NCBI GenBank assembly: GCA_051294905.1
Contig: JBPPKV010000017.1
Coordinates: forward strand, 124,001 to 188,000
Direction: 5' to 3'
Length of the DNA stretch: 64,000 nucleotides
DNA from: Botryllus schlosseri
Taxonomy: Eukaryota
Numbering within the stretch: the first letter of the stretch is position 1; each line of letters begins with the position of its first letter. The notes under the pieces were generated by a model that worked only from the letters and a program-made list of their open reading frames with translations, ran no database searches and was not told the origin of the DNA. Shown one piece after another: positions 1-40,173 of this stretch. Both the position numbers and the translations under genes were made by a program.

Positions 1-420
1 AAGGAATTGAAACCTCGCCACGAAATCCATTCTCTCCTGTGATATAACCACTAAATAACTTCAATAGAAGATGCAAGATAGAAATGACTAGGCTGGACGT
101 AATATGTTCATTAAAAACTCACAACAAAAGCTGTCGTCGGAGGCGTTACGCGGTAATATTACATTCGCCACCAATATATCTTGGTGGAAATGGATTTTGG
201 CACTCATTCATATCAAATCGAAGACGCCGATTTCCAATACAATAAATACAGCTGGAAGATTCCTTTCGAAATAATAAAAGCCTAGCCAATTTTCACATAT
301 AGTATGGAGTTATTTTCAAGAAAAGTCATTTTGTGGCTATTTTTCACTTGCCTACAATTAATATTTGCACAAGACAGATGACGGTGGCACGATAATTGAG
401 CTAATTTTGAACGAAAACTT

Positions 421-488
421 CAGGGGGTCCGCGGGGTCTGTGACGGTCCAAAAGGGGTCCGCGAACACAAAAAGGTTGAGAACCACTG
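421..488 (+). mobile_element. 3' end of a non-autonomous hAT (Charlie-like) MITE
   Basis: Ends ...aaaaaggttgagaaccactg with ggggtccgc subterminal motifs, typical of hAT MITE termini. The 5' end was not located. Confidence 0.6.
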
Positions 489-568
489 GTCTATTGGCAG
501 TTTCGAGTGCCAGTGAGGCGTCTTTACATTTTTATTAGTTCGATTTTAACCTGCCTATTTACAAACAG

Positions 569-3500
569 GGTCCAGGAATCCAAGGAATGCGAGGGGGAAG
601 GTGTGTAGGACTTGGTCTCCCTTCTATGATCTTGGGCGGATGGATAGAACATGCGTATTTTTTCAGGTGACGAGATTTCCTCCACCGAAAGTGATGCGTC
701 GAGTCACGACTCGTATTCTATGGGTAACCTACTACCAGGAGGCTTGCGTCAGCTTAAAAAGAAATTTCTTCCCAGGTGAAAGAGTTTTTTTAAAATTTTC
801 TGCTTGAATTTTTATCGGCGATATTTGACGCCCAACTAAAATCTTTCCCAACAATGGCATAATCTACTTATGCAAAGTTTGAAACAGACCGGGATGAAAT
901 TGTCCAATTTTGCATACCGTATTCGCATTGCACACACATCGCATAAGTATGATTTCCTATTGAAGCAATTCATGCCTGGCACGAGAAAAATCTCATTAAG
1001 AAATATTAGAATAAAATTGCTGTACTTGGTAGAGAGTAGGGATGGTGTGAACCTCTGAAAGGTTCAGGTTTGTGTGAACGTGAACCTTTTTGAAAGGCTC
1101 TGTGTGAACGTGAACCTGAACCTCATGACGTCATGTGACGTAATATTGCTAATTCCATGCCTACATTTCAGTGAAGTGACAGCGTATACAAATGTATAAG
1201 TTGTACACGATGCCTAGCGATGAGTCGGGCCACAAAATGCTACAATGCTCAAATACATATTGACGTTTTAAATATCGCCAAATGTATCAACTGGGGCAAT
1301 CAAATAATATAATGATCACATGAAATCAATATCTGCTGTCGCTTTACCAACAAATTCGACGACGACTTGCAAAGAATATAAGCTTACGCCGTAACGGTCT
1401 AGGCCGGTCCAGACAATGTATTCGGAGTGTGATATTTAGGGTGCAAAGCGGGATTCTATACTTGATGCTACTATTACCCCATTCACAAGTTACACAGTAG
1501 TAGCCAACACCCCAATCGCACGGATTTGGTTCTTATGGTATACTATATATATGAAGTCAAGATTGACCATGTACGCCTGCTAGATTTTGTACATCAGACA
1601 ACGATATTAATTTCGTTGATTGGTTGGATAAACATCATTCGCCGACTATATGTAGTGTGTTTCGCTTTTGACATTGTGTGATGGCGGGTCAATCTCACAG
1701 CAGACATTTTTGAGATTGTCAAGGTGCATGCTCGTTAAGTGTTGATTGTTTTACGCTGCCGGCGCCATGCATAGAGTTGACCGCAATTGAAATGCAATCA
1801 ATTTCAACCCAAGATGTTATAATGTAGCGAAAATTGTAATATATGAAAAAGGTTCACAGTGCAGAACCTACCAAGGTTGGGTATAACATATTCTGACGGG
1901 ATACATTACCATTTGTCTAAAGGGTTCTGCTGTATGGTATCAAGTTGAGTTCGCTACTAATTAAAATGCGAAATCATGCGAAATCCCGCTTCGACATTGG
2001 CAGGGCTTTGTGTATGAGTGTGGAGTTGTTGATATATGCGAGATTATCTGATTCCTGCAGTAGCGGCATTTGTGCATATATATAGGCCAATAAATCCGAT
2101 ATAATTTAAAACATCCTGTTTTTGAAACACCACCTAGTATTCCCCTTCGTTCGCATCACCTCTAAATATGAAAATGCTTGTGAAATATGCTGGAAATTGT
2201 ATGTTGTTACAGAATCTTGATTCATTTTCGAAAATTGCTATATGCCATTTTTTATTAGTAGCAGGTGTGAGGAGACCGAACTGTCCCAGGAAGAGAAAAC
2301 GAAACGTCTGCTGAGCTTGTCGGACTTTCTTCCCTCGGCAGCAAAACCCTCGGCTCAACAGCTTTCAAAAAGTGAGTCCAACTGTGGGAATATAGATTAC
2401 CAACCTAACGATAGATATGCGACTCCTGTCCTAACGCTCACATGCACTGGGCGCTCGAATCATCAGCATTAATACTCTGTTCAGATTCCAGTAACCGCAT
2501 TCCTGAATTTCTACCAAGGGGCTCTGCCAGGCAAGGGACTAGACGCCGGAAAAGGCCCGTCTCGCCATCATCTGATGGGAGCGGACCTCCGCCAAAGCGT
2601 CCCTCGGCACCTGAATATGGATATGAAGGTAAGTATTAGATTTCGCTGGTCATCAGCCAAATTGCTTCTGATACCAGACTTGGAAAACTAGAAACTCTTC
2701 AGTTTAGCCAAATTGGATCAGAATTAGAATTGCACGAATTTTATTAGTATTAGAATCAGAGCTACGCAGTGTTTTAAAATTAGATTAGAATTAGAATTGC
2801 ACAATATTTTACAGATTAGGTTAGAATTAGAATTGGAGCTACACAGTTTTTCCACATTAGATTGGTATTAGAATTAGTGAATTCTCAAAAATTGCGTGAA
2901 ATTGTGAATGAGAAAGTATATGCAGCAAAATTCAAGTGTAGTTCGTTCATATCAAGTCAAGCACATGAATGATTAATGTCCGTAAACCAAGCCTGGCTCG
3001 TTCAATAAAAATATCTTTCTCTTTATCCCTATGCAGTTCTCTTTGCATGGCTGAAAACACTTTACAATGGAGGTGATGTTGTAGTCATGCGTACGAGTTC
3101 TCGAGGAGAAGCCCTGGGATGAGCAAAACGATTTCTCTTTTCTAGTAACTCAAAACATCACAGCCCATGCTCTCACTCTCTGCTGCGAAATATCTTTCCA
3201 GTTCATCCCACAATATGTTTTCTTTTGGTAGATCTGAACATGCCTGTGTTAACTATGTCTTTTTCTTCGCTGCCGTCCTGTTTTGATAGAAAATAGAAGA
3301 TGTTGGCAAGCTTAAAACTACTATACCAGCATACTTATTTTATTTGTCACAATAACTACTATGACTGTACGATGTAAGTGATGCGATGGCGGCTTGACTC
3401 TGAATCTCCTGCACGAAAGAAATGTTCTTGTGAACATCCTGCAAAATGTTGCGCACATATAGTATTGAAAATATCGGACACTGAAATTTAGTTGCAAAAT

Positions 3501-4040
3501 CAACGACAGATGACAGATCACGGGGGCCAACTACAAGATCTGCTGTGAAGGCCAAGTCGAAGTCGCCGCCAAGGTTCGAGTCGCCGCCAAAGTTCCAGTC
3601 AACGCCCAAGGCCAAATCGACGCCCAAGTCGTCCAGGTGAGGTTACGCTTGGTAAATATGTTTTCCTCTTGGTTGTAATGACTCGAGTTGCAATTTTTGT
3701 TTGACTGGACTCTAATTTTGTTATACATGGAAAATCACGGAACTCGACATGAGTCATTGTAATATAATCGACCAAGTCATATGACCCGAGGAATTCTATA
3801 TGGCTTGACTTGAGTCTTGTGTGTTGATTTGAACTTGATAATGAACTGCGAACACTATGGCTTGGATCCCTTTGCCCCATGACTCGGACTTGACACAGTG
3901 ATGAATTGAAAATGACTCAACCTGACTCGAGTCATACTATATGAGTAAAATTGACTTTTTTCTCGGAACCTTGTGACGAGGTTACAACTTTTACCGAGGC
4001 AGGTGAAATTTTACAAAATCTGTCCATGCCGTCAATTTTG
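569..4040 (+). CDS. CENPC: Upstream exon block of the CENP-C-like gene (first copy of the duplicated exon module)
   Basis: AG/GT-bounded, phase-compatible exons 569-600 (0>2), 2265-2371 (2>1), 2485-2628 (1>1), 3492-3636 (1>2), plus candidate 4003-4040 (1>0). The three middle exons are paralogous to 6332-6444, 6729-6872 and 7124-7448. The join to 5606 is not fully resolved and the start codon was not found. Confidence 0.55.
1900..3960 (+). repeat. Copy 1 of an intragenic block duplication (paralogous to ~5960-7860)
   Basis: Collinear similarity of exons and introns. Both copies carry the same three TE remnants at matching intron positions. Confidence 0.9.
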
Positions 4041-4148
4041 GTAAGAATTGAAACCGCTGACGTAGATTTAACATGTTGGATGGCGATCTTACATTCTGAC
4101 AAGCTACCAACTTTTCAATATCCGCAACTAGAATTAGAACTAGAATTA

Positions 4149-4536
4149 CTGTAATTTTCCATGGGATGTAAATTCTGGAAAAAAGCCTGTACGCATGTAT
4201 AGTACACACCCTGCATTCGCAGTACGTGAATAATTAAGTTTTAGTATTCGTATATGTCATTCTGTTTGCGATGTCACTGTTGAACAATCATGACATAACA
4301 ATCGCTAATCATTGTACACTTAACTGCATTGTCTCTGTGAAACAATAGTAGATAGCAGCCAAAGCCTGCAAATTACTGGGCACGTTGGCTGAATGTGATG
4401 CGTGGTTAAAACAAACAGGTGTGATTTCAAGGGATCTTTTTTTCAAGGCTTGTTGTACCCATGCATAATGCGCACCCTTCCGATCTTAGGACAAAAAATT
4501 TGTAAAATTTGGCGCATTATACATGGAAAATTACGG
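4149..4536. mobile_element. pogo/Tc1-mariner-type MITE
   Basis: TIRs ctgtaattttccatg ... catggaaaattacgg, preceded by TA. A 5'-half copy lies at 53599-53870. Confidence 0.7.
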
Positions 4537-5605
4537 TTGAGGAGGTTGAGAACCAGTGCTCTAGACTAGTTACACTTCTACTTCATGGTTTCTAAGGCAT
4601 ATAATTACTTCTCACACTTTTAATTTAAAAAGAGGAAAGTAGTTTTGTAGTATGTTCATTTGCATCACCTCAAAGTAGGAAATATGCTCGCGAAGAATGC
4701 TGCGAAATATATGCGTGGTACAGTACCTAAATCCGTTTTCGGAAAATGCTACAAGTCATTTTTGGTTGGTCGTAGGTGTGAGAACAGCCTTACATTTGGT
4801 CCTGATGAGATTCATGTATGAATATATCTTTGCTGCGACATTGAAATTATGCACTTCTAAAAGCATACTTAAATGACAAAAAATCAGCAAACTTCAACAG
4901 TACCAGTGAGGCGTCTTTCTTCCCAGGTGAAAGAGCTTTAAAAAAAATTTCTGCTGGCGTTTGTATCGACGATATTTGACGCCTGTATAAGATCTACCCC
5001 AACAATGGCGTATTCTACTTGTGCAAAGTTTGAAGCAGACCGGGATGAATTTGTCTGGCCTTGCCTAACCACATTGCACACACATCATATACGTGTGATT
5101 TTGTTATGAAGCAAATCATGCCTGGCACGAGAAAAAAACGATTCAGAAGTATTTTAATATAATTATACTCGGTAAAGAGAGTAAGCATAGTATGTCTAAA
5201 TTAGAAGATATAGACTTCATGCATGAAGAGTTGAAGACACATGAATCATGTCATCTTAAAATATGTAGCTATCTTAGCAAGCCCCGTATAGTAATTTCCA
5301 GTTAGCAGCATGTGTTAACAATGTAATTCACTGCTTTCAATTTAGAAATAAAACTTCAACTTTACAAAATATACTCTAACACAGTGGACCCCATCGGCTG
5401 AAATTAGAGCCTAAATTTCCCCGCGGAGTAATCATCTGTCTACTCGGCTTGAATCTTTAGAATTATTACTCGATTCTGATTGGTTTACTCGAATGATTGT
5501 CGTCATCATCCAGCCCCGTTCATCGGTAGTTTCGAGTTCTAGTGAGGAAATTATTTTCCTTTACGTATCTTGTTGGTTCGATTTTAACCTGTAATCAACA
5601 AACAG

Positions 5606-8600
5606 CATAAAGAGAGCACGCGCTCCCTTTGCCGAGTCAACCGCGGTGGCAACGGAACAGGAGGAAGTGGCAGGCCCGAGTGCCAGAAGATCAGAAAGGT
5701 GGGCAGTTGTGATTTCAACAACTGAGCTAATTCGTAATGGATTCCGCATTGAACATTTTAATTTGTGAAATCTGATATGATGTCAGCCTGCTGTGTTGTA
5801 ACTTGATCGTGCTGCTTCGCTTTTGGTTAAATTACGTCTTTGTTTATCTTTCTGCTGTTATCTTAGTTGACGATAGTGGTTATATATCCTAATAATACAA
5901 CTGGGTTCTGCGGGTGTGTTACGGGCCGAAATAAAAATGATTGAAAGGTCGGGTTTAACATATTCCGAAAGGATACATCAACATTCGTGAGACTGGATCT
6001 GTCGTATGATATCAAGTTGAGGTCGCTACTAATTTAAATGCGAAATACTGCTTCGACATTGGCGGGGCTTTGTATATGAGTGTAGAGTTGTTATTACGTG
6101 TGATATTATCTGATTCCTGCAGTAGAGGCACTTGTGCATATATTTAGCCCGAAAAATCCGATAGAATGTAAAACGTCGTGTGTTCGAAACACGTCCTTTC
6201 TTCAAAACACCCCCCTTTTTCTCGGCTGGCTATGTGCCTGTTTTGTGGTATGTTTGTTTGCATAACCTCAAAGTATGAAATATGCTGTGAAATATATGTG
6301 TTACAGTAACTGAATGTTTCGTTAGTCGCAGCGGGATTGCCTTGTCCGCATCGCCGTCCAAGGCCGAGAAGACAAAACGAATCCAGTCCTGGTTGAACTC
6401 TCTTCCCTCGGCGAAGACACACGGTGCTCAACAGCTTTCGGAAAGTGAGTCCCACAGTTGGAGTATAGATTACCAACCTACGGATAGATATGCAGCTCCA
6501 GTCGTGCGATTGACTGCTGAGCAGGGCAGAATCAGCGTTATATGTAGTCCTATAGCTAGCGAGCCGTGCGCTAAAATTTATTAAAACTGGACCTAATCGA
6601 AAGCTAGTGTTGTACTTATTTCGAAAATACATATTAAAATCTGACCAATGCATGGAAAACAACCTCATAATAACGAGTATTGTGTAATTTCAGTACAGTC
6701 AATTCATCGGAATTAATACTTTATTCAGATTCCAGTAACCGCAACCCAGGATTGGCAACAAGTGGCTCTTCCGGGCAAGAGAGTAGACGCAGGAAAAGGC
6801 CCGTCTCACCATCTTCTGGTAGGAAAGGGCCAGCGCCAAAGCTTCCTTCGGTATCTGAAATTGGATATGAAGGTCAGTATTAGATTACGCTGGTTAACAG
6901 CCAGATGGCTTCTGAGACTAGACTTGGAGAACTAGGAAACCTTCAGTTCTTCCAAATTAGATTAGAATTTAAATTGCAAAATTTCTAGTAATTATGCTAG
7001 TATAAGAATTAGAGCTACGCAGTTTTTTATAATTAGATTAGAATTATAGATACACAATTTTTACAGATTGTATTAGAATCAGAATTAGTAGTAGTATTGG
7101 AAATATAGGACACCAAAATTCAGTTGCAAAATCTACGACAGATCACAGATCACGGGAGCAAAACAAAACACCCGCTGGGATGGCAAACTCCAAATCGAAC
7201 CCAAAGTCCAAATCGAACCCGAAATCCAAATCGAAGCCAAAGTCCAAATCGAACCCGGAATCCAAATCGAAGCCAAAGTCCAAATCGAACCCGAAATCCA
7301 ATTCGAAGCCAAGGTCCAAATCGAACCCGGAATCCAAATCAAAGCCAAGGTCCAAATCGAACCCGGAATCCAAATCGAAGCCAAAGTCCAAATCGACGCC
7401 GAAGTCCACATCGACTCCGAAATCCAAGTCAAAGCCTAAGTCGTCCAGGTGAGGTTGTGCGCTCGATAAATAAGTTTGGCCCTGGGTTGTAATGACTCTA
7501 GTTGCAATTTTTCTTTGACTTTACTCGAGTCATTTTGTTATACATGGATAATGACTTAACTCGACTCGAGTCACTTTGTGTATTAACCATGATCAAGTCG
7601 TATGACCCGAGACTTTCTGTATGGCTTGATTCAAGCCTCGTCTATCGACACATTCAATATCGATCAAGCTTCAATGGCATTGAAAAACTGGGCTGAACCT
7701 GACTTGAACTCGATAAGGAACTGTGATCACTATGGCTCCGATCCTTTGCTCGGTGACTAGAACTCAGACTTGACACAGCGATGAATTGAAAATGACTCGA
7801 GTCAAAACTATACGAGTAGAATTGACTTGTTTCTCGGAACCTTGTGATGTGGTTACAATCGTGTTTTTTGAGGGTGTGGTATGTTACACACAGACAAAAT
7901 CTTTCCTAGCCGTGAATTTCGGTAAGAATTTGCACCGCTAACTTGGATTCTACATACGGGATGGCGATCTCGGGCCAATTTGACGGCATCATAATGGGCT
8001 TTGTTACGCCACACATTTACCCTATGTTAAGTCAGAGTCAGTTCCCCAGTAATATTTCTCCCCTATTACTTTTAAAATCGCCAGTCTCATCCATTTTAAA
8101 GACATCATCTATTTTCCAGGAGTCTGTCAAAAGTTCAGAAGCCGAATCGTATTGTGGAAGAACTCCCAGGTAAGCCATGAACTGATTAGTGGAAGACTTA
8201 AACCAATAAAATACGATTGAACTCCCCTGCGTACCTCTCTACAAACGTTGCGCTACCTCAACAATCACAATTCAACTAGAAGATGGCCCAATCGCCTGCT
8301 ACCAATGAAGGCCACGCAACATTAGCAAGGCCTATTGATATTCATAGGGTGATGCAATATTATGAAAGTGTCATCACTCTCTCTACGTGACATAAGGGTG
8401 CTAGGTTGATGTAAAACTCGACTGCTTGATCTGCCTAGCGATGTTTTGATGTTGGTAATTCAGTGGTTTGCGGTATGAAACACACACTAGTATAGAAATT
8501 ACATATAGTATATGAAAATGTGCAGAACGGCAAAATGCACTCCCACCGCTATAGAGGTGTGGATGGAGGAACAAACGATTAATTTCTGATAATGTAAGGA

Positions 8601-11600
8601 CAAATACGCGTGTTAATGATTTTAACGATTGCAAAACGTTCCGCGTTTGGCTCATTACCATGAAAATAAATGTATAAATAGAAAGACTTCAAGGATTATA
8701 TGGTATAGCGTCATTATGCAACTAATACATAATACAATGTATGTGGAATAGGTTACAATAGATCAGGGGTCGCCAACTCAAAATAGGTCGCGGGCCACTT
8801 TTCCAAATTCCTGGAGGCCGCGGGCCGCATGACATCAATATCGATATAAAAGTAGGCAACGCAGTTCAACAACCACGTCTGATAACTCTACGTTGTTACA
8901 ACGCTGTGCTTTCTAACATAGGCGACGGTTATAGTCACCACAGAAGAACTAATATTTTATTGAACAAACACAAATACAACAAAAAGTATCTTGATCATCA
9001 ATGTCATTATATTTTGGACTATGAGCTGTACACGATACCTGACAATGACAACACTCTTTAGCCGCTAAAACAGGGGTGGCCAACATTTTTGTAATTCACG
9101 GCCGCATTTCGCGTACTCATGTAGCCTGCGGCCGCATACCGGTGGTTAGTCGTGATACACTAGCTGGGGCCAAATACCCACGTTATCATGTCCATGTCCA
9201 TTGCCGGTACACTCCGAACTAATCTATATGCACATATCGGCTTACTATGCGCACCAAATCGTTAGTAGTTATGTTGTAAAGAGCCACAGAGAACCAATCT
9301 GTAGTCGCGCGAAGCGCGAAAAATTTTTCATGTTCATGAGTGAATTTCGTCAATAAATATTAGTATAGTTTCACATATTACTATAAAATATTTATCCTTT
9401 CTCGGCCAATGTGTTCAGATTTACAGATACAGCTGATATGCAGGGGGTATCTGCGAAAACTTAGGGTTGTTATTACAAGTGTCGACAGCCGCATAATTTT
9501 CCTTCTACTGCTGCAGATTGGCCACCCATGGATTGAAGAATCAATATTGGGGTTAGCTATACACGGTAGGCCTACTTGCTAGACAACTATGTCCTCGTAA
9601 AGCATGGTCTTTTGGAGCGCCCGAAGTCGTTTTGCAGGCGTCTCGGTCTTGGCAGTGGTGGGCCATTGCACGTCAAGGCAATATGCCCATTCGTACCAGC
9701 AAATTCTTCATCCATGGAATGATATTACCATGCCGAAGCCGTATCAACTAGTGAGTAATAGTGATAGTGGGCACATAGAATGGCTCACTTTGAAAAACAA
9801 CAACATTGTGTTTCAACTGAAATCAATTTTAGCGTTTCAACATGATTTACTAAGCGTTTTTCTGAATTTTTTTCAAATCAGGTCGCGGGCCGCAAAATAG
9901 GACCTCGCGGGCCGCATGCGGCCCGCGGGCCGCGTGTTGGAGACCCCTGCAATAGATACATAAAAACCACTAGATATACACAGTGCGACATCTAAATCAT
10001 ACTCTTCGAACAAGTATTTTCGACCATGCTTTTCGAATAGATGCTCAGGTCAATTTCTGAATTCGACTCGTAGAGTGCTATTTGTCCCGGCACTGGTATA
10101 ATCGAAACTGCGTGTCCGTGCGGGAATAATTAGGTCCATACCTCTTGTGAATTCATCTTCTTTTCGTTGTCAGTTCCGATCCTGCCCGTAGGCACTGCAG
10201 CCGGACGGCGCCGTAGTCCGAGGATAAAGCTTCCAGTTGAACCAGGCGTTCAATACAACTTCCGATATTCGTAAGTGGATTTCTAATAGTAAATGCTATT
10301 TTTTTCAATTCCAAAGTTTTCTAACTGCTGTAACTTTGCTAATGCGAGTTGGGATTGAGTCAAATTTGTTATGTATCATTTCTGGACATTGATATATACA
10401 ACTGACAAGATATCGTATGGCTTGATCTGCAGGTCGTTGGCTCATTCCCCAGCCGGGTCAGAGCAAATACCTGAATAGTAACACTGGTATTCACGACTTT
10501 CCCTCTTGGATAACAGAGATATCATGGATGGGCGGTGTAATACTTGAAAACCTATCCTATCTAACAATGCAAATCTTACCAACTTATTCCGGCGACAATC
10601 TTACACTATCGTTGATCTTAACCACTAAATATACCTGTAGAAAGGTAAACAATTGCTCAATATGACAATTAAATAAGAAAAACAACAGACTAATAGCATG
10701 GCTTACATCTGGATTGCACGCATGGCTTGGTATCTCTAAATAACGATGGTATGCTATCGTTACAATGACTTATGGTTGGAATTCAGCCTATGTTGTTGTG
10801 CAGCGTTTTTTTGCAGCCAATCTAGCAATGATATCCAGTAGCAAGTATAATTTAAAAAGATTTATTAGAAGTTATTATTTATTAGTAGTTCACCACTCCT
10901 ATGTTTTTGTGTTGTTGCAGCTCTGACTTCGATGAGGCCGGCTTCAAGAAAGTCATCGGAATTACAAAGATCACTTATCCAGGTATGCCGACACGTTGCA
11001 GTTTGAAATGGTTGCATTTATGTATCTCTTTTCTCAGATAATCCCGCACGACTGGCTGCTACAGTCACGACTAGGAGGCTATACAAAAGAAAAGCGAGCA
11101 AAGCTGCCCGTGAAGGTGCTGTCATCTATTCCAGGGTTTTCAACATTCTGATCGTAATATTATATGTATTGAGCAGACAATGCTGCACCCGTGTCTGATA
11201 CAGTTCCACCCGTGTCTGATACAGTTCCAAGGAAGAGGACATACAAGCGAAAAGGGTGCAAAGCTGCCTGTGAAGGTGCTGTCATTTTTAGGGTTTTAAA
11301 CATTATGATCGAAATATTATTTGTAGTATAATGGAATGCAGCTTCATGATCTTTCTCCGGTGCGTCCCAGTGCCATCCAAATCGCGCATCGAGTGCTACC
11401 AACCTATTAAAATCAAAATCCCGCCAAGTTTAAGAACCAGTATTGTAAATTGAATCAAGTTTATATGAGATACATTCCGAAATCAGTGCCTATAATTCAA
11501 ATTTCCTCACCGGTATGTTACTTGTCTTATTTTGATATGGGCAAAAATAGGTCAGGCCGTATTTTGGCTCGATATTCTGCTTTCTGCCAATGTGGAGAAC

Positions 11601-14600
11601 TGGAATCAGATGCAGTCGGTCAGTTACGCTTCCACGTTACACACTTTGACAATGACTATGTACCTCCAAACAGATGAACAGGAGCCATCCGTGAAGACGA
11701 GGAAGATCGTCAACATGATCAATGCCTCCGACAATAATGAACTGTGGCCCATAGGTGGGTATACATTTGTGTCATGTCTTGTCCTAGGAATGTGTTTGAC
11801 GTCACGTTCATCATTTTGTTTTAACTGCTGCGGGCACAATGGTTTGAGTACTCGAATCCGAATCGAGTATTACTTGTAATCATTGGAGTGGTGACAGCCG
11901 ATTTTTTTTCGCGACGTGAAAATATATTTTTTGGGAAGGTTTTTCCACTGTGAAAGTCTTGAAACCTCGAAACAGTGCCTCATAAACACAGAATCCTTTG
12001 ATTGTCAGGGTGAAAAAATGTAATGTCGTAACCGCGTGCTTGTCATGAAATGAGTTTTTCTTTTCATTTGATCTCAGTAGTACGTGTAACCTATAACGTG
12101 TGACAGTCCGTAACAAAATCTGATGAAAGTCTTTCAAATGAGCCATGAGTGACCGCTTTTGCTCAATTAATTCGATCGATACCATCAATGCGTTGTATAG
12201 CGTTTCACTACAAACACTCATGCATCAGCCGGGTCAGACCGCGGTTCATGGTGAAATGCTCTACAGCAGGGGCGGGCAACATATGGCCCGCGTCGGGATT
12301 TTGTCCGGCGCGGACAGTTTCCCTTCTTACATGATAATGTGACCCGCGACCCCACTCTGCCGAGATTCTCCACTACTTGCTCGAACGTCAAATTTTAGTG
12401 ACTGTAGAGTGCAGAGTGGAGCTTACACGTAAGTTCGTCGAACTGAGAAGACTTGCATTATCGGCATACGATTTACTCAGCCCTACTGAATTGTTATCTT
12501 GGTCAATTTGGGGTACTTGGCTTATTTCTATATCACATTAAAGACCGTAGCTATTTCATCGCACTGTGTTACAATGCTGTGGATTGATCTCAAATACACG
12601 GGTGTCGTTTCCACCAAGGTGCTTGGCTATGTATGACGTGTTTCGCATCCTGCAATACGAATAATCGAGGTTCACAGCCCTCCGCCGCGGAAAATAGGAC
12701 CAAAGTATAATTCTCGCTGATAAGTTCACTCTTGTGGCTGGGAGCTTGTAATTTCTGTACTTGAAATAATCATCTCTAAATAGTCGACTTGAATCATTAC
12801 AATTAACGCTCGATTCAGATAAGAGTGTCCGAATCATTGTGGCCAGCCCTGATCGCGACCAAGTTACACTAATTGGAGAGTGAATTGCCTGAAAAAGCAC
12901 ATTGTAACCAACTCTACTTATTTTTTGGTCAGTCTTTAATGCATCGCATGGGCTTTTCACCTTAGGAAAGTTTTCCGCCATGCAGACTCTGGTATGCTAC
13001 AAGTCCTCTTCTTTACCAGAGCTTTCACGAGTCGTTGTTCATGGGACCGACAAGTCGAAGCAAGAAGAAATTTCAAAGGGGGTGTTCCTGTCAAAAGACA
13101 TTAATATAACAACAACCGGCATGTCCAGAGTCATCCAAGGGCGAATGGTCATCCGGCCAAACGTGACAAAGCCCGAAAGGACGTGCCCGGGCACAGCGGT
13201 GAGTTTTTCTGTACCATTCATCGTCTCTCTCGTGGTTTTTGATTACTTGAGCTGCCAAGAATACTTATTGACCCAAGATACCTGAACGATTGTTTGTGGA
13301 AATGTGTATAGTATATTTTTTTTAAAACTAGTGTATTGACGTTAATCCCTTTCTCATCATATGTTGTATAAAGCAGTGGTTCTTGGAGCCAGTTTGAGGG
13401 GGTTCTAGCCCGTCCTGGCTACCATTGGCAGCAGACAATTAGGAGCGAAAAGCAGTCAAATTGTGACTGCTGTGGGGGGGTACGTGTGTAGTGCTGTATG
13501 CGGGAGACATTGGGACTCAAAATCGAAACCCATTCGTGCTCAATTGCTGATTTTATCTCCAATATTTATTTGGTCAATTGCAATTTGAAAATTGATATCT
13601 CACTGATCAAGTAATAGGTTGACATTTTCTATGGCAAAACCAAGCCTTTCGTATTCCTAACTGTTGTCTGAAATGGAATATCAGAAGTTGCAATGAATAT
13701 TCTATAGAATGATTTCATTTTTGTTGGTGCAGCCAGGGGGAAAGAGGCCAATAAATTGTTCGAGAAATTCTGGTGTCACTACATTTCTGGATTTTATTAA
13801 CCAGCTGGCACCGCTAACCGGTTTTTCCAAAAAAAATCTGATTAACTTTCGAAACTTGAAAACATAACCTCAATGGAATTCGAAACCAACATGTCATATA
13901 TCGTTGGACGCTGAATGTCAACACGCGTGTATATAATCGAGAAGACGAGAAAACCTTGTACGTTACTAAATAACATGCTTTAACGATGTAATTAATAACA
14001 ATGATCCCGCCCAAAAGCCGACCTGTGACGTCCTCATGAATATATAGCCTTAACTATGTGGCGATTTATAATGACGTGCCGTAACTTTTCCAAGACTCCA
14101 TTTGCTCATACATGTACCAATATTATTGACCGAATTCAGACTAATTTCATCGAATTAAAATTAGTGATTTGGGCTTTTCCGGTAATCAATCGCCCAATAC
14201 CAGACTTGATTCACAACGGGAAGGAATGTGTGTGTGCGTCCGTATAAATGGTAGTGATGAAATTGTCCATTGATGGGTGTGGGTCTAAGGGCTTTCCCAT
14301 GAGGGAATTTCCCTCAACACTTGAAAGATTTGCCCCCTAAATATTTTTCTGACTGTATCCTTGCTCATTTTGTATACAAGACGAACCTAAAAGAGGAGCT
14401 ACCTCTTTGGTAGGACGCAGACACCACACAATTCTAAGCTTGCATTTATTTACGGGATGCAGCATTTTCCTCTCAGGATAGCATTTAAGGGCTGCTCAGA
14501 TTGCCAAGACAGGACTATTCAGCGCTTGTCGCTTATGCGCCTATATGAACAATGGACAATTGGACATATATAACCTATATCAAAGGTATCAGCGAACAAT

Positions 14601-15102
14601 CGACAGTCTTCCCGCCGCACTAAATCGTCTTGTTAGCCGCACTTGTACCACTAACCAGGAGAGGAAGAATGGCATTTAAGCGTACTTCGAGCTAGAAATA
14701 GCGCAAAAGTAATGCACGTTTCAGACAGCCCAGTTTCAGGCTCAGTAGTTGTGCCATAAATAAATATTAAGTTGTGCAGGTCCAGGTGTGCCTCACTTTA
14801 CTGCCCTAAAGTCGAATTCCCCGTAGTTGAGAATTACTCCTAGGTTGGGTATCACTGTTCTGACATGTGTTATTAGTGTTTGTTTATGCCTGAGTCCCAA
14901 GTAATCAATATTGTCTGAACGAATATAATCTTTTTTACAGGCCTTTTTGATCGAAGAAGGAGCCGTTGAATTGACCCTCGGCGGCCAAAAGATGAAGCTA
15001 GGAGAGAGGTCTCAGTTTCAAGTGCCCCGAGGGAACAATTATAAAATAAAAAATATAGCGGCAAAGAGCGCCGTGCTCTTTGCCTGCTTTCAACTACCGT
15101 AA
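5606..15102 (+). CDS. CENPC: Centromere protein C (CENP-C/Mif2)-like, 13 exons, C-terminal cupin domain
   Basis: Exons 5606-5697, 6332-6444, 6729-6872, 7124-7448, 8120-8169, 10201-10270, 10921-10982, 11038-11115, 11177-11275, 11674-11754, 12966-13198, 14941-15102 (and a candidate 12-nt micro-exon at 5530-5541 as the 13th) join in frame without stops. C-terminus GRMVIRPNVTKPERTCPGTAAFLIEEGAVELTLGGQKMKLGERSQFQVPRGNNYKIKNIAAKSAVLFACFQLP* matches the CENP-C cupin (human ...GKLILGP...FYVPSGNYYNIKN...). A degenerate CENP-C motif lies upstream. Confidence 0.85.
5960..7860 (+). repeat. Copy 2 of the intragenic block duplication
   Basis: Collinear with 1900-3960. Exon 6729-6872 differs from 2485-2628 at 29 of 144 nt by my count. 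Confidence 0.9.
7189..7440 (+). repeat. Coding minisatellite: 14 x 18 bp encoding SKS(N/K/T)P(K/E/R)
   Basis: Unit TCC AAA TCG AA(C/G) CC(A/G) (A/G)A(A/G), 14 x 18 = 252 bp, with a 36-bp higher-order alternation. Lies inside exon 7124-7448. Confidence 0.95.
8764..9949. mobile_element. Non-autonomous hAT element in a CENP-C intron
   Basis: TIRs caggggtcgccaac ... gttggagacccctg, a perfect 8-bp TSD CAATAGAT (8756-8763 and 9950-9957), and gcggccgc/cgcgggcc subterminal repeats. Confidence 0.92.
14364..14613 (+). repeat. Dispersed repeat; inverted copy at 17841-18063
   Basis: The reverse complement aligns over ~230-250 bp (e.g. aatggacaattggacatata / tatatgtccaattgtccatt). Confidence 0.85.
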
Positions 15103-15116
15103 TTTGGAAACCTTTT

Positions 15117-15608
15117 GAAATGCCAGAAAGAAATCAGGTCCAGCTCCACAAGATATTCGCATCCACTTTATGCAGCAAGAATGGTGACCACTCTCGAAAT
15201 TTCAACACACTGAAGTACAACGACATGACTCTTCGCGGCATCCACGGCGAACGCCAATTTCTTGGCTCATCCAATGGTATGTACACTTGTATATCTAGAG
15301 CTCTCCACTGGCCTACAAGCAGCTCAATACTACGCACGGCGATGCTTATCTGCAGTTATGCTTGGAACATGGCATTACGCGGTACATTTCGTTGTAGCTT
15401 TCCGTTAAGAGTGTCGAGCTTATATCTGGTCTGGCTCATCAGACGGTGGGCAGTATCCCTTTGTGGAGAGTGCGAACGTGCGGCATAACCACTAGTTGAG
15501 CAAGGTACCATCCAATTATCAGCATAGGATCGATGAATGTTGTGTGCTATACTGTGTAATTGTGTCTTTCGGGTATCTCTGAGATGTAGCAGGTATCACT
15601 AAGGTATC
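15117..15608 (+). repeat. Unclassified interspersed repeat (other copies: 28425-28545 on +, ~33150-33720 on -)
   Basis: Shared start atgccagaaagaaat..tccagct and shared later blocks (ctgtggagag...gagttaagcaagg; agatg(t/c)agcaggtatcactaag). Confidence 0.75.
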
Positions 15609-15609
15609 T

Positions 15610-15890
15610 GACCGAGCAAGATAGTGTAATGGTGATGCGTCCGGCTTCTTGATCGGTAGGCCGTGGGTTTGATCCCCGGCCGGGTCTGACCAGAAACTTA
15701 AAAACTGGTTGCTATCCTGCTTGACGCTCAGCATCCAAAGAGAGCATGGATGAGAAAAGACGGGGGAGGGGGGGGGGGCAGACTAGCTGACCTCACGGTC
15801 GCATCTCAGTCGTAAGACCATCTCAATGGTGCAAGCGAAAACGAGTACCCCACTGCTCTCTCGTCCCTAGACTGTATTTACATCTGTACA
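15610..15890 (+). mobile_element. tRNA-derived SINE (Nin-domain-like)
   Basis: Box A tagtgtaatgg, degenerate box B ggtttgatccc, then ccccggccgggtc.gacca...aaaactggt...gctcagcat. Paralog at 19693. Confidence 0.8.
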
Positions 15891-16249
15891 TCATCGAGCA
15901 ATTTCTTCTACCAATTGTTCAGAACAATGCCGATTTTCAAACATCAAGTACTGTTTTGAGGTGCACATTGCCCTGACAAGATTTTTAATTTGTATTGTCA
16001 AAATCCGTGCAACAGTAGATTTCGATTAAGGCCAGTTTTATTAGTTTTAAGCGCTGGGGTTGTCATCTTTACCACTACCAATGATGCTACATTTAGATTG
16101 CTCAGGAATAAAGCTGCTTGCCCAAGCGTAACGGCGGGAGTTGGTTATCTATTCGTAGGTTTGTAATCTATACTATGGTTGACAACTCAGGTATCATTTC
16201 TGGAGTGTGTTCAAGTCTGCCTAACGCTCATTTATCCCTCTGAAGTGTG

Positions 16250-16266
16250 TCTGTGTGTGTGTGTGT
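16250..16266. repeat. (TG)n microsatellite
   Basis: Direct sequence. Confidence 0.8.
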
Positions 16267-16917
16267 TAATTAGGGTTGGTCAAGCGACTGTTTTCCAAAT
16301 TCATTCGGCTCGGTGAAAAAATTGTTAGGGAGCTTAGAAAACGCCTAGAACCAAAATTTGCTCATTTTGAAACAGTAGACACAAAGTCATTAATATTTTA
16401 AATTTCAACAATTTTATGGAATAATGTTATCTACCGTGAAAAATTTTTTCGGTGATTTTATTTCAAAATATGTGCACTCATTAAAACACACGAGACCATA
16501 TACATTATGTGAGAGATATTTCCAATCGGAGCATATCTTGGTGGTGCGATTTCAATATTGTGAAATACTAGAGTTGTCACATGTTATATTTCTGATATTT
16601 ACGTTGTAATCATGAAAGGACGAGTTCGGAATAGTTGGTCCTTTGCCGGTTACGTTCGCATATGCAATGTGTACATATGTGATGACGTAATAATATTACA
16701 TTTACCATTCGTATCGCAATTGCGGTTTTGGATCGTTATTATAGGTCCCAAACAATCGACAGATTATATTTTCATCTGCCCAAGACACACAATATACAAT
16801 GTGATAATTCAAGTCACACAACGCTTGCGTTCGCGATCAGTCCATCATCTCTTGTAGGCGTTTTGCGACATCTCTCCTGATTAGCTCCGTGAGATCCGTG
16901 ATTTGTTCGCGGGTCAC

Positions 16918-17459
16918 TTATCTATTTTTGATGCTGAGTTGTTTATTTATTAACAATATCCAGTTCTTGACTGTGGCATATGCTGTTAGGGTCGTTCTTT
17001 TGTGCGGTCCGTCGTAGGCATAGTACGTTTCTTCCATGATAGCATTGAAGTCCATTTTTACGATGTCTTCGACATCGGCACTAACAACGATATAAATTTT
17101 TTTTTGTAAGCAATGCATTTCATATATATATGCTTCATCGTATCCTCGTCGGCGCTGCATAGTTTGTATTTGTTTTTCTGCAGTATGTTTGCGGTATAAG
17201 TCCGGCTGGATTTTTCTTTTTTCGCACCCATGAGAAATGCTACATTTGTGATTCTGTATGCAAGCACTCCATCAATATTACTGAAGCATGCTTTTACGTC
17301 TCGCTTTGTTAGCCGTATTTCCTCCCAGATCGTAGTCTTGGTGTTTGGTTGGGTGGAATCGTTGACCGGAATTTCGTAATTCGTATACTTCCTTTTGTGT
17401 GATTTCCGTCGGGTCTTCGCATTGGACTTGTGTCGTGCAAAGGGTTTCGATCTCCTCAT
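16918..17459 (-). other. Orphan overlapping ORF pair (133 aa and 80 aa) that would fuse with one extra A in an A9 run
   Basis: ORFs 17058-17459 and 16918-17160 overlap across the T9 run at ~17097-17105. No recognised homolog. Confidence 0.25.
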
Positions 17460-19692
17460 GGTAGTTTGTTATGAGGCGTACCTGTGAGGCATGCTGTTAG
17501 GGTAGAGTTATTTGCTTACCTTTCGACCTCAATGCCCATTGCCCAAGTTGTAGATTGCTTCTTGATGCCGTTCTGCTTAGGTTTTGCATTCTTTCGCTCC
17601 TGGTTTTGATATGAATATTAATGTCAACCATGGTAATGACGCTATGGTACGATACAATAGTGAGTGTGTAACCGTGCATTGTCATCACATTTTGACATAT
17701 CTGGATAACTAGAGCCAATCAACAAATTCAGAGTTGATATTCATGAACAGCGACCCTAAATAATGAAGATTGCCCACGACCGTCTCAGAAGCATACGTCT
17801 AACAAGATGATTTAGTGCAGCCAACAAATTCCAGCTAGCCGGGAAGACTGCCGCATATTTGCTGATACCTTCAATATAGGCTATATATGTCCAATTGTCC
17901 ATTGTTCATATATGCGCATAGATGTCCTGTCTTGCCAATCTGAGTAGCTCTTCAATGCTATCCGCAGAGGAAAATGCTGCATCCCATAATGAAATGCACA
18001 ATTGGAATTGTGTGCGACCGACAAAAGAGGTGACTTCTCTTTTAGTCTTGTACACAAAATGAAGGACTTCGGTCTTGGTTACTTATAGATGTTCTGTTTT
18101 GGTGATGCTCGAGTAGCTGTTCTTTTGATGTTTCTTCGTACTGATATTCATATCCGTCATTTTAGTCGGTGTTTCCATTCTTGTAATCCTCAAGCGTATC
18201 TCCGACGAGTATTCTGTTTATTTTGTGGGCTATGCCCAATATTATTCCTTTACGCTGTAAAGTCCCCAGAAAAACTGTTCGTCTCCCTCACAGCCGAACA
18301 GTCGTCAGTAACTCAGCCATGACCAAAACACTTGATCAATGTCATCGAGATAGAATCGTTATACGATGGTGTCTATCAGGCGCGTATCCAGAGCGCGAAA
18401 AAGGGGGGGTTTTGCGTTACGAAATTGGCTATTGTGACGTCATCATTACGATCACTCATCTCCACGCCGTGGTGGAGATGTGCGGTGAGTGGGAGATGTA
18501 CGAATACGATACAGACATTGCGTGAAAATCGCGTTTCTTTTACGGTATGATTGAAAGAAATTCGTAAATGCTCACATTTAGTCATGAGCCGGCAAACGCC
18601 GCCCGTCTTCAAGCGCGACCAGAGATGCGCGTTTTTGTTGGGTTTTGACGATATTATGCGCACGGTCGGTAGTATCGCAGCGAACGAACAAGCGCGGAAT
18701 AAGGCGGTAGCGTAAACGAGGCCGATCGCGATCGCCACAGAGAGGTGTGGTGTGAACAGTGTACGTCGTACACGAATGTGTGCTTTTCGATGGCCTTACT
18801 AGCCATACGGTTGAGTGTGTAGTGCGCGCGAAGATAATTAGACCTTCATTGCAAGCACGCAAGTCAGTCAATTAATACAGAGTACACACTGGAATAATAA
18901 CTTGATCGACAGAGAAACTTGTCAGCCGGTATAATTAGGTTAACTTTACTACTAGGCCTACTCAATTCTCCCGTTCAGAGACAACATAGGCCTGTATTTG
19001 GACGACAGCAAGCCACCTAACAATCGGGAACGTGGATTGCTAGGCTTGTATTTTGAAATGTGAATGTCAATCGTAGGCCATTTCTCGCCAATAATCGCGA
19101 ATACAATGTGGATTTGAGAATAGCATTGTCGTACTGGTGTCGTCGTGTCTACGTCTCGCTGATCAATCAACACGCCGTGCAATTCTTGATTAGGATTTCA
19201 AGGCGAGCAGGTGCAGCGAATTCGCGAGCGATGTTAATTGCCGACAACTTCGTCTTTGCAATTACGTATCGCGTCGGCCAATTAGATTAGATTTTCCTAA
19301 AATGCGTCTCTCGTTTTAGCAAGGCGAGAGAGAAATCGAGGGAAGAAAGTTGAGAACGTCAGCAACTGCCACAGCTGAAATGTAGCTGAACAAGCGCAGA
19401 TTTCGTATGGAATCAGCGAATTAAAATGACCTATTTTATCCTTTCGACTAATTCGGCGCATAATTCCAATATTTTGTAGGGGTGTTAGTCCCCTTAACTA
19501 ACATTAAGACGCCATATTCGCCTTCGAATACGTAAAAACGAATATGGTAAACTGATAAATTAGCAAATATTAGAGACTATATTTGACATCAATTTTTAGG
19601 ATTTTGAAAAGGGGGGGTTCCGACCCCCTGAAACCCCCGTGAATACGCCACTGGTGTCTATCGCTGGCGTTGATAACAAACGGGGTGGTATA

Positions 19693-19960
19693 GGCCGAGC
19701 GAGATAGTGTAATGGTTATGCGTCCAGCTTCTCGATCGGTAGGTCGTGGGTTCAATCCCCGGCCGGGTCAGACCAAAGACTCCAAAACTGGTATCCGCGG
19801 CTATCCAGCTAGGCGCTCAGCATCCATGGATAGCGTGGAGGAGAAAAATACGGTGGTGCAGACTAGATTACCTTACTTAAAGGTCGTATCGCATCTCCAT
19901 CGTCAAAGCATCTCGATGGTGCAGGCGAAAATAAATCTGATCCCTCTCTCTCTCTATAAT
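19693..19960 (+). mobile_element. tRNA-derived SINE (Nin-domain-like)
   Basis: Box A tagtgtaatgg, box B ggttcaatccc, then cggccgggtcagaccaaagact..aaaactggtat...ggcgctcagcat and a CT-rich tail. Confidence 0.85.
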
Positions 19961-20489
19961 ACAGCTGCTCTATACTAAAGCAGCACAATATGCAGTAAAA
20001 TATGAAAAATCTATTCACTTTGGCATTGGTTATTCAATCAACTGCATACCGGAAAAGTGCATAGTTACTTCACAAAATTGATCCTTTCTATCATCAGATA
20101 GAATCACCACAGAGTGTGGTTCATTTTATGCAGTGAAAATAACGGAGTATTTGAATCCTACTTGGTGCACACCGTGGTTCGGTGTCTTATTGAATTAAAC
20201 GGCTTTTAGCGAATTTTACTCAGTCTCGCTCACATATCTGATGTTGACGTTGAAGCAGACAGCAACAACAGACTGAATAGTAGTCGATCGATTCCGTGGA
20301 ATCCGTGAACATGGAATTATTGAGGACGAGGAACAATGTGGAACAATTTTGATCGCAAACCAAAGCTCATTATCGCGTAGCATTCGTTCAGGATACAGAA
20401 ATGAATCAAAGTGTAATATCCTCTATCTGGAGGTTGATTGAATTGTCCTTCACTGCCTGAGTGGGGGACGCTTATACTTAATTTATTGT

Positions 20490-37900: not shown

Positions 37901-39102
37901 TAGAGCCCGACCTATATTGGATTTTTGAGCCGATACCGATAAAACCGAAATCCAGCACCTTCACCGATAACCCCGATATATTCAGCCGATATTCAAAAGA
38001 TATGGCATCTAGCTCAAGGCACATATTTAACACCTCAAGAGTATTTCTTTGAACAGATTTACAGCCATTGCCATGCTTGAACATGAAAGGAATGATCTAT
38101 AATAAATATATTAATAGCACCAGTCTAGCAGTTGCAGATTACAGTTCACAAAGCATAATTTCTCGCCTCTCTCTCCAGGAAGTGAACTTCTGTGGTCTTC
38201 ATAAATGATGCATGTAGTACTAAACACATTGAGTGGGCTTTCACTTGGTACCATAGTTAGTGGCAGAGCAAGAATTGGAAATCTTTCTTTATTCCGGTTC
38301 CACCACTCCGCTGCAGGAGATCTTTCCTTCAATGGTTCCACCAAATATTGATATTCTTCTGGCAGTGCACCTGGAGCTTTCAGCACATCTTTAACAAATA
38401 GTTGAAGAGAACATTGTTCACGTCCGCTACTGCTCCACCCATTCCCTTGGGCCTTGACCATGACCAGCATTTCAGCAATCAATTGATCAATATTTGACGC
38501 TCTTTTAACAGCATCGGCCCATGTCATCATGGAATCAAATATTTTCGTATGAATTGTTGGCTCTGCTCCACTTTTGCTTGATTTTCTTGCACTCTACTAG
38601 TCTCGCATATTCCCCATCATGGTGGCCGCTCAGGCCTCAGTCAGATGACTTCATATATTACTGGTATTTTTTGCTTTGTTGCCTTGGCTTGTGAGCTTCT
38701 TACACAGACACCACCAGCACTATTTACAGAAAATTGTTTCGACGCTACACTTCTCTCCATCATCAGAGGGTCAGTCCAGCATTAAATCCATCCAGCTGCT
38801 TTCTGTCTTCGGTATTCTATCATTGCAGGGGGATTCCCACGAAGTCACTGGGGCATAACGGTGAAAGTATATTTCTCACATAGGGCTACTGGCCTGCATG
38901 CACTATGCCGCTTGGCCATTTATTTTTATAATTTACCGACATGCAGTGAAGACCTCACATCTTCTCTGGCTCCCTACCACCTTGTTGTGACGTCACGAAA
39001 ATGGCCGATATTTTTTTACCTCCAATGGCCGATACCGATATTTCTTTCCAAGTGTGATATCGACTCGATATTATCGGCGAGCCGATAATCGGTCGGGCTC
39101 TA
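37901..39102 (-). mobile_element. 1.2 kb internally deleted hAT transposon retaining the hATC dimerisation domain
   Basis: TIR tagagcccgacc...ggtcgggctcta with ccgata subterminal repeats. ORF 38111-38530 reads PAAEWWNRNKERFPILA...PSESPLNVFSTTCIIYEDHRSSL (Dimer_Tnp_hAT-like). Confidence 0.9.
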
Positions 39103-39160
39103 GTAATGAGTATGTTACCTATCCGCTAGTAGTGCTGTCGGTCACAACATCGCTAGTTCT

Positions 39161-39736
39161 ACAGATAACTAACCTACGGATAGATAGCCAACAGCCGTCG
39201 TCACGCTTGCTTGCTCGGAGGAAAATACTGCTCAGCAATCTGAACTCAACGTAATTGCCAATCCCATAGCTGACGACCCGAGCGCTCAAATTTAACAAAG
39301 TTGATCTTATTAGAAAGCTACTGTGGCACTGATTCCGAAAATATACATTAAACTTTCGTCAAGGCAAAAGAACCAGCCCGAAATAGCGTTCAAAGTCTGA
39401 AAATCGTTATTGTTCCAGACAATCGTATGGACGCACCACAATGACCATAACAATAACCCTTGCGTGTCCTCGATTGTTCAGAACAATGCCAATTTTCAGA
39501 CTTTGAGGTGTATTTCGAGGCGGTTCCATTGCCCCGATCGGATTTGAATGTATATTTTCGGAATCAGTGCGACAGTAGCGTTCAAATAAGATCAACTTTA
39601 TTCAATTTGAGCGCTCGGGTCGTCAGCTATGGGATTGGCAATTACGTTGAGTTCAGATTGCTGAGCAGTATTTTCCTCCGAGCAAGCAAGCGTGACGACG
39701 GCTGTTGGCTATCTATCCGTAGGTTAGTTATCTATA
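39161..39736. mobile_element. MITE with ~190-bp TIRs, present in copy 1 only
   Basis: Long inverted arms (agataactaacctacggatagatagccaac...). Flanked by CTAGTTCT at 39153-39160 and 39737-39744. Empty site at 60256-60263. Confidence 0.95.
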
Positions 39737-39947
39737 CTAGTTCTCAAAGCGGAGTCTCCATGCCAGCTACGTTGTAAATTGCTATGATTCTATCTTTCAA
39801 ATAAGATTTTACCCATTCTAATGCCACGCTATAGTGTTGTCTTAGCGGCCTGTATTAAATTACTTGCGGACCACAACTTTGCCGACAACTGAGATGGAGG
39901 ATGGTAATGATGATTTTGATTAGCAATCTTGTTCATCTCTATCTCTC

Positions 39948-39963
39948 AAGCTCTCTCTCTCTT

Positions 39964-40004
<41 letters not shown>
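39948..40004. repeat. (CT)n microsatellite (duplicated at ~60467-60523)
   Basis: Direct sequence; same length in both copies. Confidence 0.9.
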
Positions 40005-40007
<3 letters not shown>

Positions 40008-40147
40008 ATTCACTGGTTCACCCAAAGTCACTCAACTATGACAAGTCGTCCGAACGTATTTTCATGGAGCGAGAAATGTTGCACAACTTGATGTTTTGTA
40101 GTTGAGTGACTTTGGGTTCACCGACCCGAACGATTTGATGACTTTGT

Positions 40148-40173
40148 TTACGTCACGTGATTCGATTACGTCA
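40148..40173 (+). promoter_or_regulatory. Candidate NBR1 promoter motifs: CLEAR/E-box-like GTCACGTGAT and two TTACGTCA (CRE/ATF-like) sites
   Basis: GTCACGTGAT at 40152-40161; TTACGTCA at 40148-40155 and 40166-40173; about 1.3 kb upstream of the NBR1 ATG exon. Motif match only. Confidence 0.35.

What the first reader, a model, noticed from the sequence alone, without database searches (positions are those of the whole stretch)
10201..10982. CENP-C-like protein whose CENP-C motif has lost the CENP-A-reading aromatic residues
Seen: the spliced sequence reads GRRRSPRIKL-PVEPGVQYNFRYSSDFDEAGFKKVIGI. Aligned to my recall of the human motif (RRTKRTRLKPLEYWRGERIDY...GGFVISGV), the basic half, P.E, the terminal Y and the GF..V.G tail are kept, but YW becomes PG. 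Established: the Arg anchor binds the H2A-H2B acidic patch and the YW aromatics bind the hydrophobic CENP-A C-terminal tail. I found no second R...YW motif in the assembled exons. Inference: this may be a paralog that binds nucleosomes and dimerises through the cupin but is not CENP-A specific (for example a germline or meiotic kinetochore factor), or the lineage has a co-evolved, unusual CENP-A tail.
Basis: partly seen in the sequence, partly recalled or inferred. Interest (0 to 1): 0.75.

Follow-up and report, generated by a model that had tools for sequence, protein, structure and literature searches.

The report
CENP-C-like gene with a degenerate nucleosome motif
A sea-squirt gene of the centromere-protein CENP-C family is intact and keeps its dimerising end domain, but the short motif that normally recognises the centromeric histone is degraded almost beyond recognition, and whether this marks a specialised extra copy or the whole lineage could not be tested here.

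Summary
The peptide is real. Exons 10174-10270 and 10921-10982 (+) have canonical splice sites and join in frame. Through one or two short basic exons they continue into a two-exon cupin that ends at a stop codon at 15100. The last exon alone hits Pfam CENP-C_C (PF11699) at 41.7 bits, and its only PDB matches are Cnp3, CENP-C and Mif2.

The "motif" reading is overstated. Against the human, rat and chicken motifs the stretch shares 5 of 23 residues and scores about 0. That ranks roughly 700-900th of 128,000 six-frame positions in the window. YW is missing, and so are the R-x4-P register of the critical arginine and the GER. It counts as a motif only by its position upstream of the cupin.

No [YFW]W pair lies in any plausible exon of bases 1-15200. 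The upstream duplicated RRRKRPVSPSS exons lack one too.

I could not reach other tunicate CENP-C genes, this species' CENP-A, or RNA evidence. Five sequence searches and the paper searches on tunicate CENP-C gave nothing usable.

The scan found this before on other DNA: unchecked notes report YW-less motifs at two other loci of this genome and a CENP-C-like family of more than 15 genes.

Best reading: a fast-evolving CENP-C-like copy that cannot read the CENP-A tail in the canonical way.

The parts
2485..2628 (+). Upstream exon X2 (phase 1-1), encoding the RRRKRPVSPSS core followed by KRPSAPEYGYE. It has no aromatic pair.
   Evidence: Splice sites ttcag| and |gtaagt, open frame, 62% protein identity to X2'.
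6729..6872 (+). Exon X2', the copy of X2 in the second unit of a 4.1-kb tandem duplication. Its end phase matches the start of the motif exon.
   Evidence: Joining X2' to 10174 keeps the frame open to the stop.
10174..10270 (+). Exon at the place of the CENP-C motif, containing GRRRSPRIKLPVEPGVQYNFRY.
   Evidence: It scores about 0 against canonical motifs.
10921..10982 (+). Exon B, encoding SDFDEAGFKKVIGITKITYP.
11038..11115 (+). Exon C (phase 1-1), a basic, NLS-like stretch containing RRLYKRKASKAARE.
11177..11275 (+). Exon D, a tandem copy of exon C plus its downstream intron, with the same phases. It holds a perfect 21-bp internal repeat. Whether it is used is unknown.
12966..13198 (+). First cupin exon. 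It is very divergent.
   Evidence: In-frame join to the last exon. On its own it has no Pfam or PDB hit.
14941..15102 (+). Last exon with the stop codon, encoding the C-terminal half of the Mif2/CENP-C cupin.
   Evidence: PF11699 at E 1.4e-10 and 41.7 bits against a cut-off of 29. S. pombe Cnp3 at E 7.6e-5, then chicken CENP-C, Mif2 and human CENP-C.

Best explanation
This is the 3' part of an intact gene of the CENP-C family. Shown: a C-terminal Mif2/CENP-C-type cupin, which is the dimerisation domain, and about 100-130 residues upstream an Arg/Pro-rich stretch where CENP-C proteins carry their nucleosome-binding motif. That stretch has lost the defining core RxxxxPxxYW: the aromatic pair, the register of the critical arginine, and the following GER. 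Inferred: the protein cannot clamp the hydrophobic CENP-A C-terminal tail in the canonical way. It would still dimerise through the cupin. It could touch chromatin through its arginine clusters (GRRRSPRIK, RRRKRPVSPSS, RRLYKRK), either on the H2A-H2B acidic patch or on DNA, without telling CENP-A from H3. Any centromere targeting would then come from other contacts, such as CCAN partners or pairing with another CENP-C copy. It is most likely one fast-evolving member of a lineage-specific set of CENP-C-like genes, not a lone orthologue with two point changes.
For: Gene model and open frame. Cupin identity: PF11699 at 41.7 bits on half a domain, with Cupin_2 below its cut-off. All four PDB hits are CENP-C-family chains, and VPRGN.Y.IKNI is conserved with fission yeast Cnp3, which argues for long purifying selection on the cupin. 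Motif: canonical sequences came from PDB chains and the core definition from PMC4830207. The window stretch shares 5 of 23 residues, scores 0 to +2, and ranks about 600-900 of 127,864 positions. No [YFW]W lies in any candidate exon. Fast evolution: the 4.1-kb intragenic duplication is about 78% identical, and exon dN/dS is about 0.9 around an invariant 11-residue core. Loss is plausible: deleting the motif is tolerated in chicken DT40 cells (PMC6891089; PMC9252888), and the shark cupin-proximal site also lacks the tryptophans (PMC4830207). Unchecked leads: other CENP-C-like loci in the same genome, two of them noted as YW-less.
Against: There is no expression evidence for this copy. No orthologue or paralogue sequence could be fetched, so constraint on the motif exon is unmeasured. 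The 5' end of the gene probably lies outside the window and could carry a canonical central-region-type motif. Three aromatic residues (Y, F, Y) sit 3-7 residues after PG and might substitute in a shifted register. The existence of paralogues rests only on unchecked scan notes.
Confidence: 0.5

Rival explanations
1. Lineage-wide change. This is the working CENP-C, or a fully functional copy, of a sea squirt whose whole CENP-C lineage replaced the YW clamp. It still recognises CENP-A nucleosomes through a co-evolved interface, for example the downstream Y-N-F-R-Y aromatics and a changed CENP-A tail.
For: Scan notes report the same YW-less state at two other loci of this genome (unchecked), which would fit a loss older than the copies. 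Tunicates keep CenH3 (PMC3156773). The CENP-A tail itself is poorly conserved apart from its hydrophobicity (PMC3865007). Aromatic residues remain just downstream of PG.
Against: The critical arginine register and GER are also gone, which looks more like decay of the motif than retuning. Neither a CENP-A sequence nor another tunicate CENP-C could be examined.
Confidence: 0.25
2. Silent or decaying duplicate. This is an unexpressed CENP-C copy whose motif has drifted under relaxed constraint, while its short exons still happen to be open.
For: Three protein searches with exon pieces found no transcript-derived fragments. dN/dS of the duplicated upstream exon is about 0.9. A follow-up note on a neighbouring CENP-C-like gene saw no RNA (unchecked).
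Against: All eight exons are open, with canonical splice sites and matching phases. The cupin keeps the residues shared with yeast Cnp3. The 11-residue core of the duplicated exon is invariant while the exon as a whole is about 20% diverged at the DNA level. The blank searches are weak evidence, because that tool needs shared 5-residue words and a similar protein length.
Confidence: 0.15
3. Canonical reader elsewhere. The protein still reads CENP-A through a central-region-type R..P..WW module encoded in 5' exons outside the window, and only the cupin-proximal site has degenerated, as in the shark protein.
For: PMC4830207 describes shark and teleost proteins with two sites, where the shark cupin-proximal site lacks the tryptophans. 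The gene's 5' end is not visible in the window.
Against: The in-window upstream modules that resemble such sites also lack an aromatic pair: RRRKRPVSPSS followed by DG or GR, and KRPSAPEYGY.
Confidence: 0.1

Closest known systems
Vertebrate CENP-C (human 736-758, rat, chicken CENP-C motif plus C-terminal cupin)
   Same: It has a C-terminal Mif2/CENP-C cupin. A basic stretch lies roughly 100 residues upstream of the cupin, followed by a Lys/Arg-rich linker. RR, P, E and the final Y of the 23-residue motif fall in register.
   Different: The core RxxxxPxxYW is not present: YW becomes PG, the critical arginine falls on Pro or Ser, and GER is absent. The match scores at chance level.
Putative shark (Callorhinchus) and teleost CENP-C described by Kral, PMC4830207
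   Same: These are cupin-defined CENP-C candidates with only partial motif homology. The shark cupin-proximal site lacks the tryptophans.
   Different: Those proteins keep an RxxxxPxxWW site in the central region. Here no such site is seen in the exons inside the window.
Cenp-C1/Cenp-C2 paralogues of the Drosophila subgenus and hcp-4 duplicates of Caenorhabditis
   Same: They are precedents for duplicated, fast-evolving CENP-C genes with differential loss of motifs.
   Different: Both fly paralogues keep the CenH3-binding motif with its critical arginine. The only worm copy reported without the motif is a CENP-C/CenH3 fusion.
Chicken CENP-C lacking residues 648-676 (experimental deletion of the motif)
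   Same: This is a CENP-C without CENP-A binding through the C-terminal motif, and it still supports viability through CCAN contacts. It is a functional model for what this protein may be.
   Different: It is an engineered allele in a species with one CENP-C gene, not a natural variant.

Membership tests
CENP-C / Mif2 family | C-terminal Mif2/CENP-C-type cupin (Pfam PF11699) | tested here: met
   The last exon alone gives E 1.4e-10 and 41.7 bits against a cut-off of 29. Generic Cupin_2 scores 26.3, below its cut-off of 27.2. The PDB hits are only Cnp3, chicken CENP-C, Mif2 and human CENP-C.
CENP-C / Mif2 family | CENP-C motif with core R-x4-P-x2-[YF]-W within about 100 residues upstream of the cupin | tested here: not met
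   A basic stretch sits at the right place, but it shares 5 of 23 residues, scores 0 to +2 and ranks about 600-900 of 127,864 positions. YW becomes PG, and the arginine register falls on Pro (gapless) or Ser (one gap), judged against the sequences and the core defined.
CENP-C / Mif2 family | Second nucleosome-binding site of central-region type (R-x-S-x-x-P-S-x-W-W; vertebrates only) | tested here: inconclusive
   No WW or YW lies in any candidate exon of 1-15200. The X2 cores align only weakly to human 517-531, scoring 7 at rank 541. The 5' exons outside the window were not seen.
CENP-C / Mif2 family | N-terminal Mis12-complex binding region and CCAN (CENP-HIKM/LN) binding region | not testable with these tools
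   The 5' part of the gene lies outside the window or is unrecognisable, and no full-length relative could be fetched.
CENP-C / Mif2 family | Localisation to centromeres and binding to CENP-A nucleosomes | not testable with these tools
   This needs an experiment.
Lineage-specific CENP-C paralogue (like Drosophila Cenp-C2) | A second CENP-C gene in the same genome, with this copy branching as a duplicate | not tested
   Only the 64-kb window is readable, and it holds no second copy. Scan notes of other loci are unchecked leads.

The most novel reading that the evidence does not exclude
This sea squirt has expanded CENP-C into a family of many fast-evolving genes whose members, this one included, have given up the aromatic clamp that reads the CENP-A tail. 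Inner-kinetochore attachment in this lineage would then run on a different, possibly CENP-A-tail-independent contact, or the copies would be specialised germline or drive-related factors.
Probability: 0.2. Interest if true: 0.75.

Novelty: new variant of a known kind. Interest (0 to 1): 0.45.

Why it matters
The R...YW motif is the most conserved piece of CENP-C from yeast to plants and mammals, and it is the textbook link between the centromeric histone and the kinetochore. A natural, intact chordate CENP-C-family gene without it would show how far that link can be rewired, more so if it is one of many copies. It would also give a natural counterpart to the engineered motif-less chicken allele. 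If it turns out to be a silent duplicate, it is merely an example of the fast turnover already known for centromere proteins.

Tried and rejected
It returned only two unrelated repeat proteins. The last exon would have been the better query.

2. Word-index protein searches with cupin exon 1, the last exon and the motif exon found no candidates. The tool's length window (0.55-1.75 times the query) excludes full-length proteins.

3. A metagenome scan with the last exon gave 597 pattern matches, none confirmed.

4. The ESM Atlas returned only generic bacterial cupins.

5. PDB searches with the motif exon, exon B and cupin exon 1 found nothing relevant.

6. Literature: no paper in the library treats tunicate CENP-C. 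Tunicate CenH3 is recorded, but its tail is not described.

7. I looked for a canonical motif on an alternative or hidden exon, including WW or YW directly after an acceptor site. There is none. SRSWQWW at 9656 lies in an otherwise unremarkable intronic open frame with no proline or basic context.

8. I looked for a third copy of the 4.1-kb unit that would make the motif exon a diverged X2 exon. There is no DNA or X1-exon similarity. The protein similarity of the motif exon to X2/X2' has p of about 0.02 in two conflicting registers, so it is left as a hint.

9. A cupin-like stretch at 8768-8851 (E 0.059) has no Pfam support and was treated as chance.

10. Left out: Pfam on the spliced cupin, structure prediction, and a length-matched homology search.

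Full report
**What is there**

The window is eukaryotic DNA at about 40% G+C. Earlier notes of this scan call the genome a sea squirt (unchecked). On the + strand, the finding's two exons are real.

- Exon 10174-10270 has a strong acceptor and a gtaagt donor.
- Exon 10921-10982 joins it in frame.
- The first exon ends at 10270, one base later than I first took it.

Downstream the gene continues as follows.

- Exon C (11038-11115) is basic and of phase 1-1.
- A tandem copy of exon C with its downstream intron lies at 11177-11275. It holds a perfect 21-bp internal repeat, and its use is unknown.
- The first cupin exon is 12966-13198 and the last exon is 14941-15099, followed by a stop codon.
- All splice sites are AG/GT, and three alternative exon chains translate without an internal stop.

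**Family**

The last exon alone, 53 residues, matches Pfam CENP-C_C (PF11699) at E 1.4e-10 and 41.7 bits, above the cut-off of 29. The generic Cupin_2 model stays below its own cut-off.

Against all PDB sequences the last exon finds only S. pombe Cnp3 (E 7.6e-5), chicken CENP-C, Mif2 and human CENP-C. It shares the block VPRGN.Y.IKNI with Cnp3. It also argues that the cupin has been under purifying selection. The first cupin exon is so divergent that it hits nothing.

**Is the stretch a CENP-C motif?**

I took canonical sequences from tools rather than memory.

- The vertebrate consensus and the core RxxxxPxxYW come from PMC4830207.
- The actual human (736-758), rat and chicken motifs and the human central site (517-531) come from PDB chains.

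It corresponds to chicken R659, whose mutation abolishes CENP-A nucleosome binding and kinetochore localisation of the C-terminal fragment (PMC6891089). In that register it falls on Pro. A one-residue gap lines RIK up with RLK, but the critical arginine then falls on Ser. GER is absent and YW is PG.

A gapless BLOSUM62 scan of the motif over all six frames of the window scores this stretch 0 to +2. That ranks about 600-900 of 127,864 positions. By sequence alone the match is therefore at chance level. What identifies the stretch is its place: an arginine cluster about 100-130 residues before the cupin barrel, followed by a Lys/Arg-rich linker. The fair description is a degenerate relic at the motif's position, not a motif with two substitutions.

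**No hidden canonical motif in the window**

Regular-expression scans of every frame of 1-20000 for basic-...-[YFW]W found nothing with the right context. A listing of every [YFW]W dipeptide in 1-15200 found nothing either, including dipeptides directly after an acceptor site.

Upstream, a 4.1-kb tandem duplication (765-4089 versus 4916-7970, about 78% identity) carries two copies of a phase 1-1 exon, X2 at 2485-2628 and X2' at 6729-6872. The end phase of X2' fits the motif exon. These exons hold an invariant RRRKRPVSPSS core in an otherwise fast-changing sequence, with dN/dS about 0.9 over 47 codons. They resemble the motif exon only weakly, at p about 0.02 in two conflicting registers. They also have no aromatic pair; the nearest thing is KRPSAPEYGY in X2. 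The 5' end of the gene is probably outside the window, so a canonical site further upstream cannot be excluded.

**What could not be done**

No other tunicate CENP-C, no paralogue from this genome, no CENP-A and no transcript could be reached.

- The exhaustive search went to the poorly conserved cupin exon and gave junk.
- Three word-index searches were blank, as was a metagenome scan.
- The library holds no paper on tunicate CENP-C.
- PMC3156773 records that Oikopleura and two Ciona species have a CenH3, but it says nothing of the tail.
- A spliced protein has no reference here, so whole-domain Pfam scoring, structure prediction and a length-matched search were left out.

**Leads from the scan (unchecked)**

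One search lists other CENP-C-like loci in the same genome.

- One has a duplicated motif cassette, with RNA support for its upstream copy.
- One lies 1.6 Mb downstream on the same piece. Its follow-up speaks of a family of over fifteen genes with no RNA seen.
- Two further notes describe a motif lacking YW.

These notes fit a multi-copy, fast-evolving family, but I tested none of them.

**Mechanism**

Established background:

- The motif docks an arginine in the H2A-H2B acidic patch and clamps the hydrophobic CENP-A tail with its aromatic residues (PMC3865007; PMC4830207).
- Deleting the motif in chicken cells lowers mitotic CENP-C levels but is tolerated, because CCAN contacts also hold CENP-C (PMC6891089; PMC9252888).
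- The shark cupin-proximal site already lacks the tryptophans.
- CENP-C duplicates are known in flies and worms, but the fly copies keep the motif.

Inference: this protein dimerises through its cupin. It can contact chromatin through arginine clusters without telling CENP-A from H3, and it depends on other contacts for any centromere targeting. I put this at about 0.5.

Rival readings:

- A lineage-wide retuned interface, about 0.25.
- A silent duplicate, about 0.15.
- A canonical site in unseen 5' exons, about 0.1.

**Verdict**

The claim that the motif merely lost its aromatic residues is softened to a degenerate motif. The paralogue-versus-lineage question stays open. This is a new variant of a known kind, of moderate interest. 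Interest would rise if the whole-genome count and expression data confirm a large YW-less family.

Noticed in passing
window 765-4089 versus 4916-7970: A tandem intragenic duplication of about 4.1 kb at about 78% identity, introns included. Its X2 exons (2485-2628 and 6729-6872) evolve at about the neutral rate (dN/dS about 0.9) around an invariant RRRKRPVSPSS core that carries only synonymous changes.
   Followed up: partly
window 7189-7442 versus 3561-3610: An 18-bp (6-codon) indel-free minisatellite encoding KSKSNP-type repeats. It has 14 copies in the second duplication unit and about 2 in the first. Whether it is coding is unknown.
   Followed up: no
window 11038-11115 versus 11177-11275, and 11186-11229: A recent tandem duplication of exon C together with its downstream intron, where the intron part is about 88% identical. 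The copy holds a perfect 21-bp (7-codon) repeat encoding PVSDTVP twice. Both exons have the same phases, so either or both could be spliced in.
   Followed up: partly
window 8768-8851 (+): Inside the intron upstream of the motif exon, an open frame reads GRQLKIGRGPLFQIPGGRGPHDINIDIK. It is 36% identical to the conserved part of the last cupin exon (in-window E 0.059) and has no Pfam support. It could be chance or a relic exon.
   Followed up: partly
window 9860-9950: A G+C-rich palindromic element built of GCGGGCCGC-type units, lying in an AT-rich intron. It looks like a small foldback or MITE-type repeat.
   Followed up: no
window about 38100-43500 versus 59200-64000: A large, near-identical direct duplication. 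The same open frames recur about 21.1 kb apart, for example 38114-38593 and 59217-59696.
   Followed up: no
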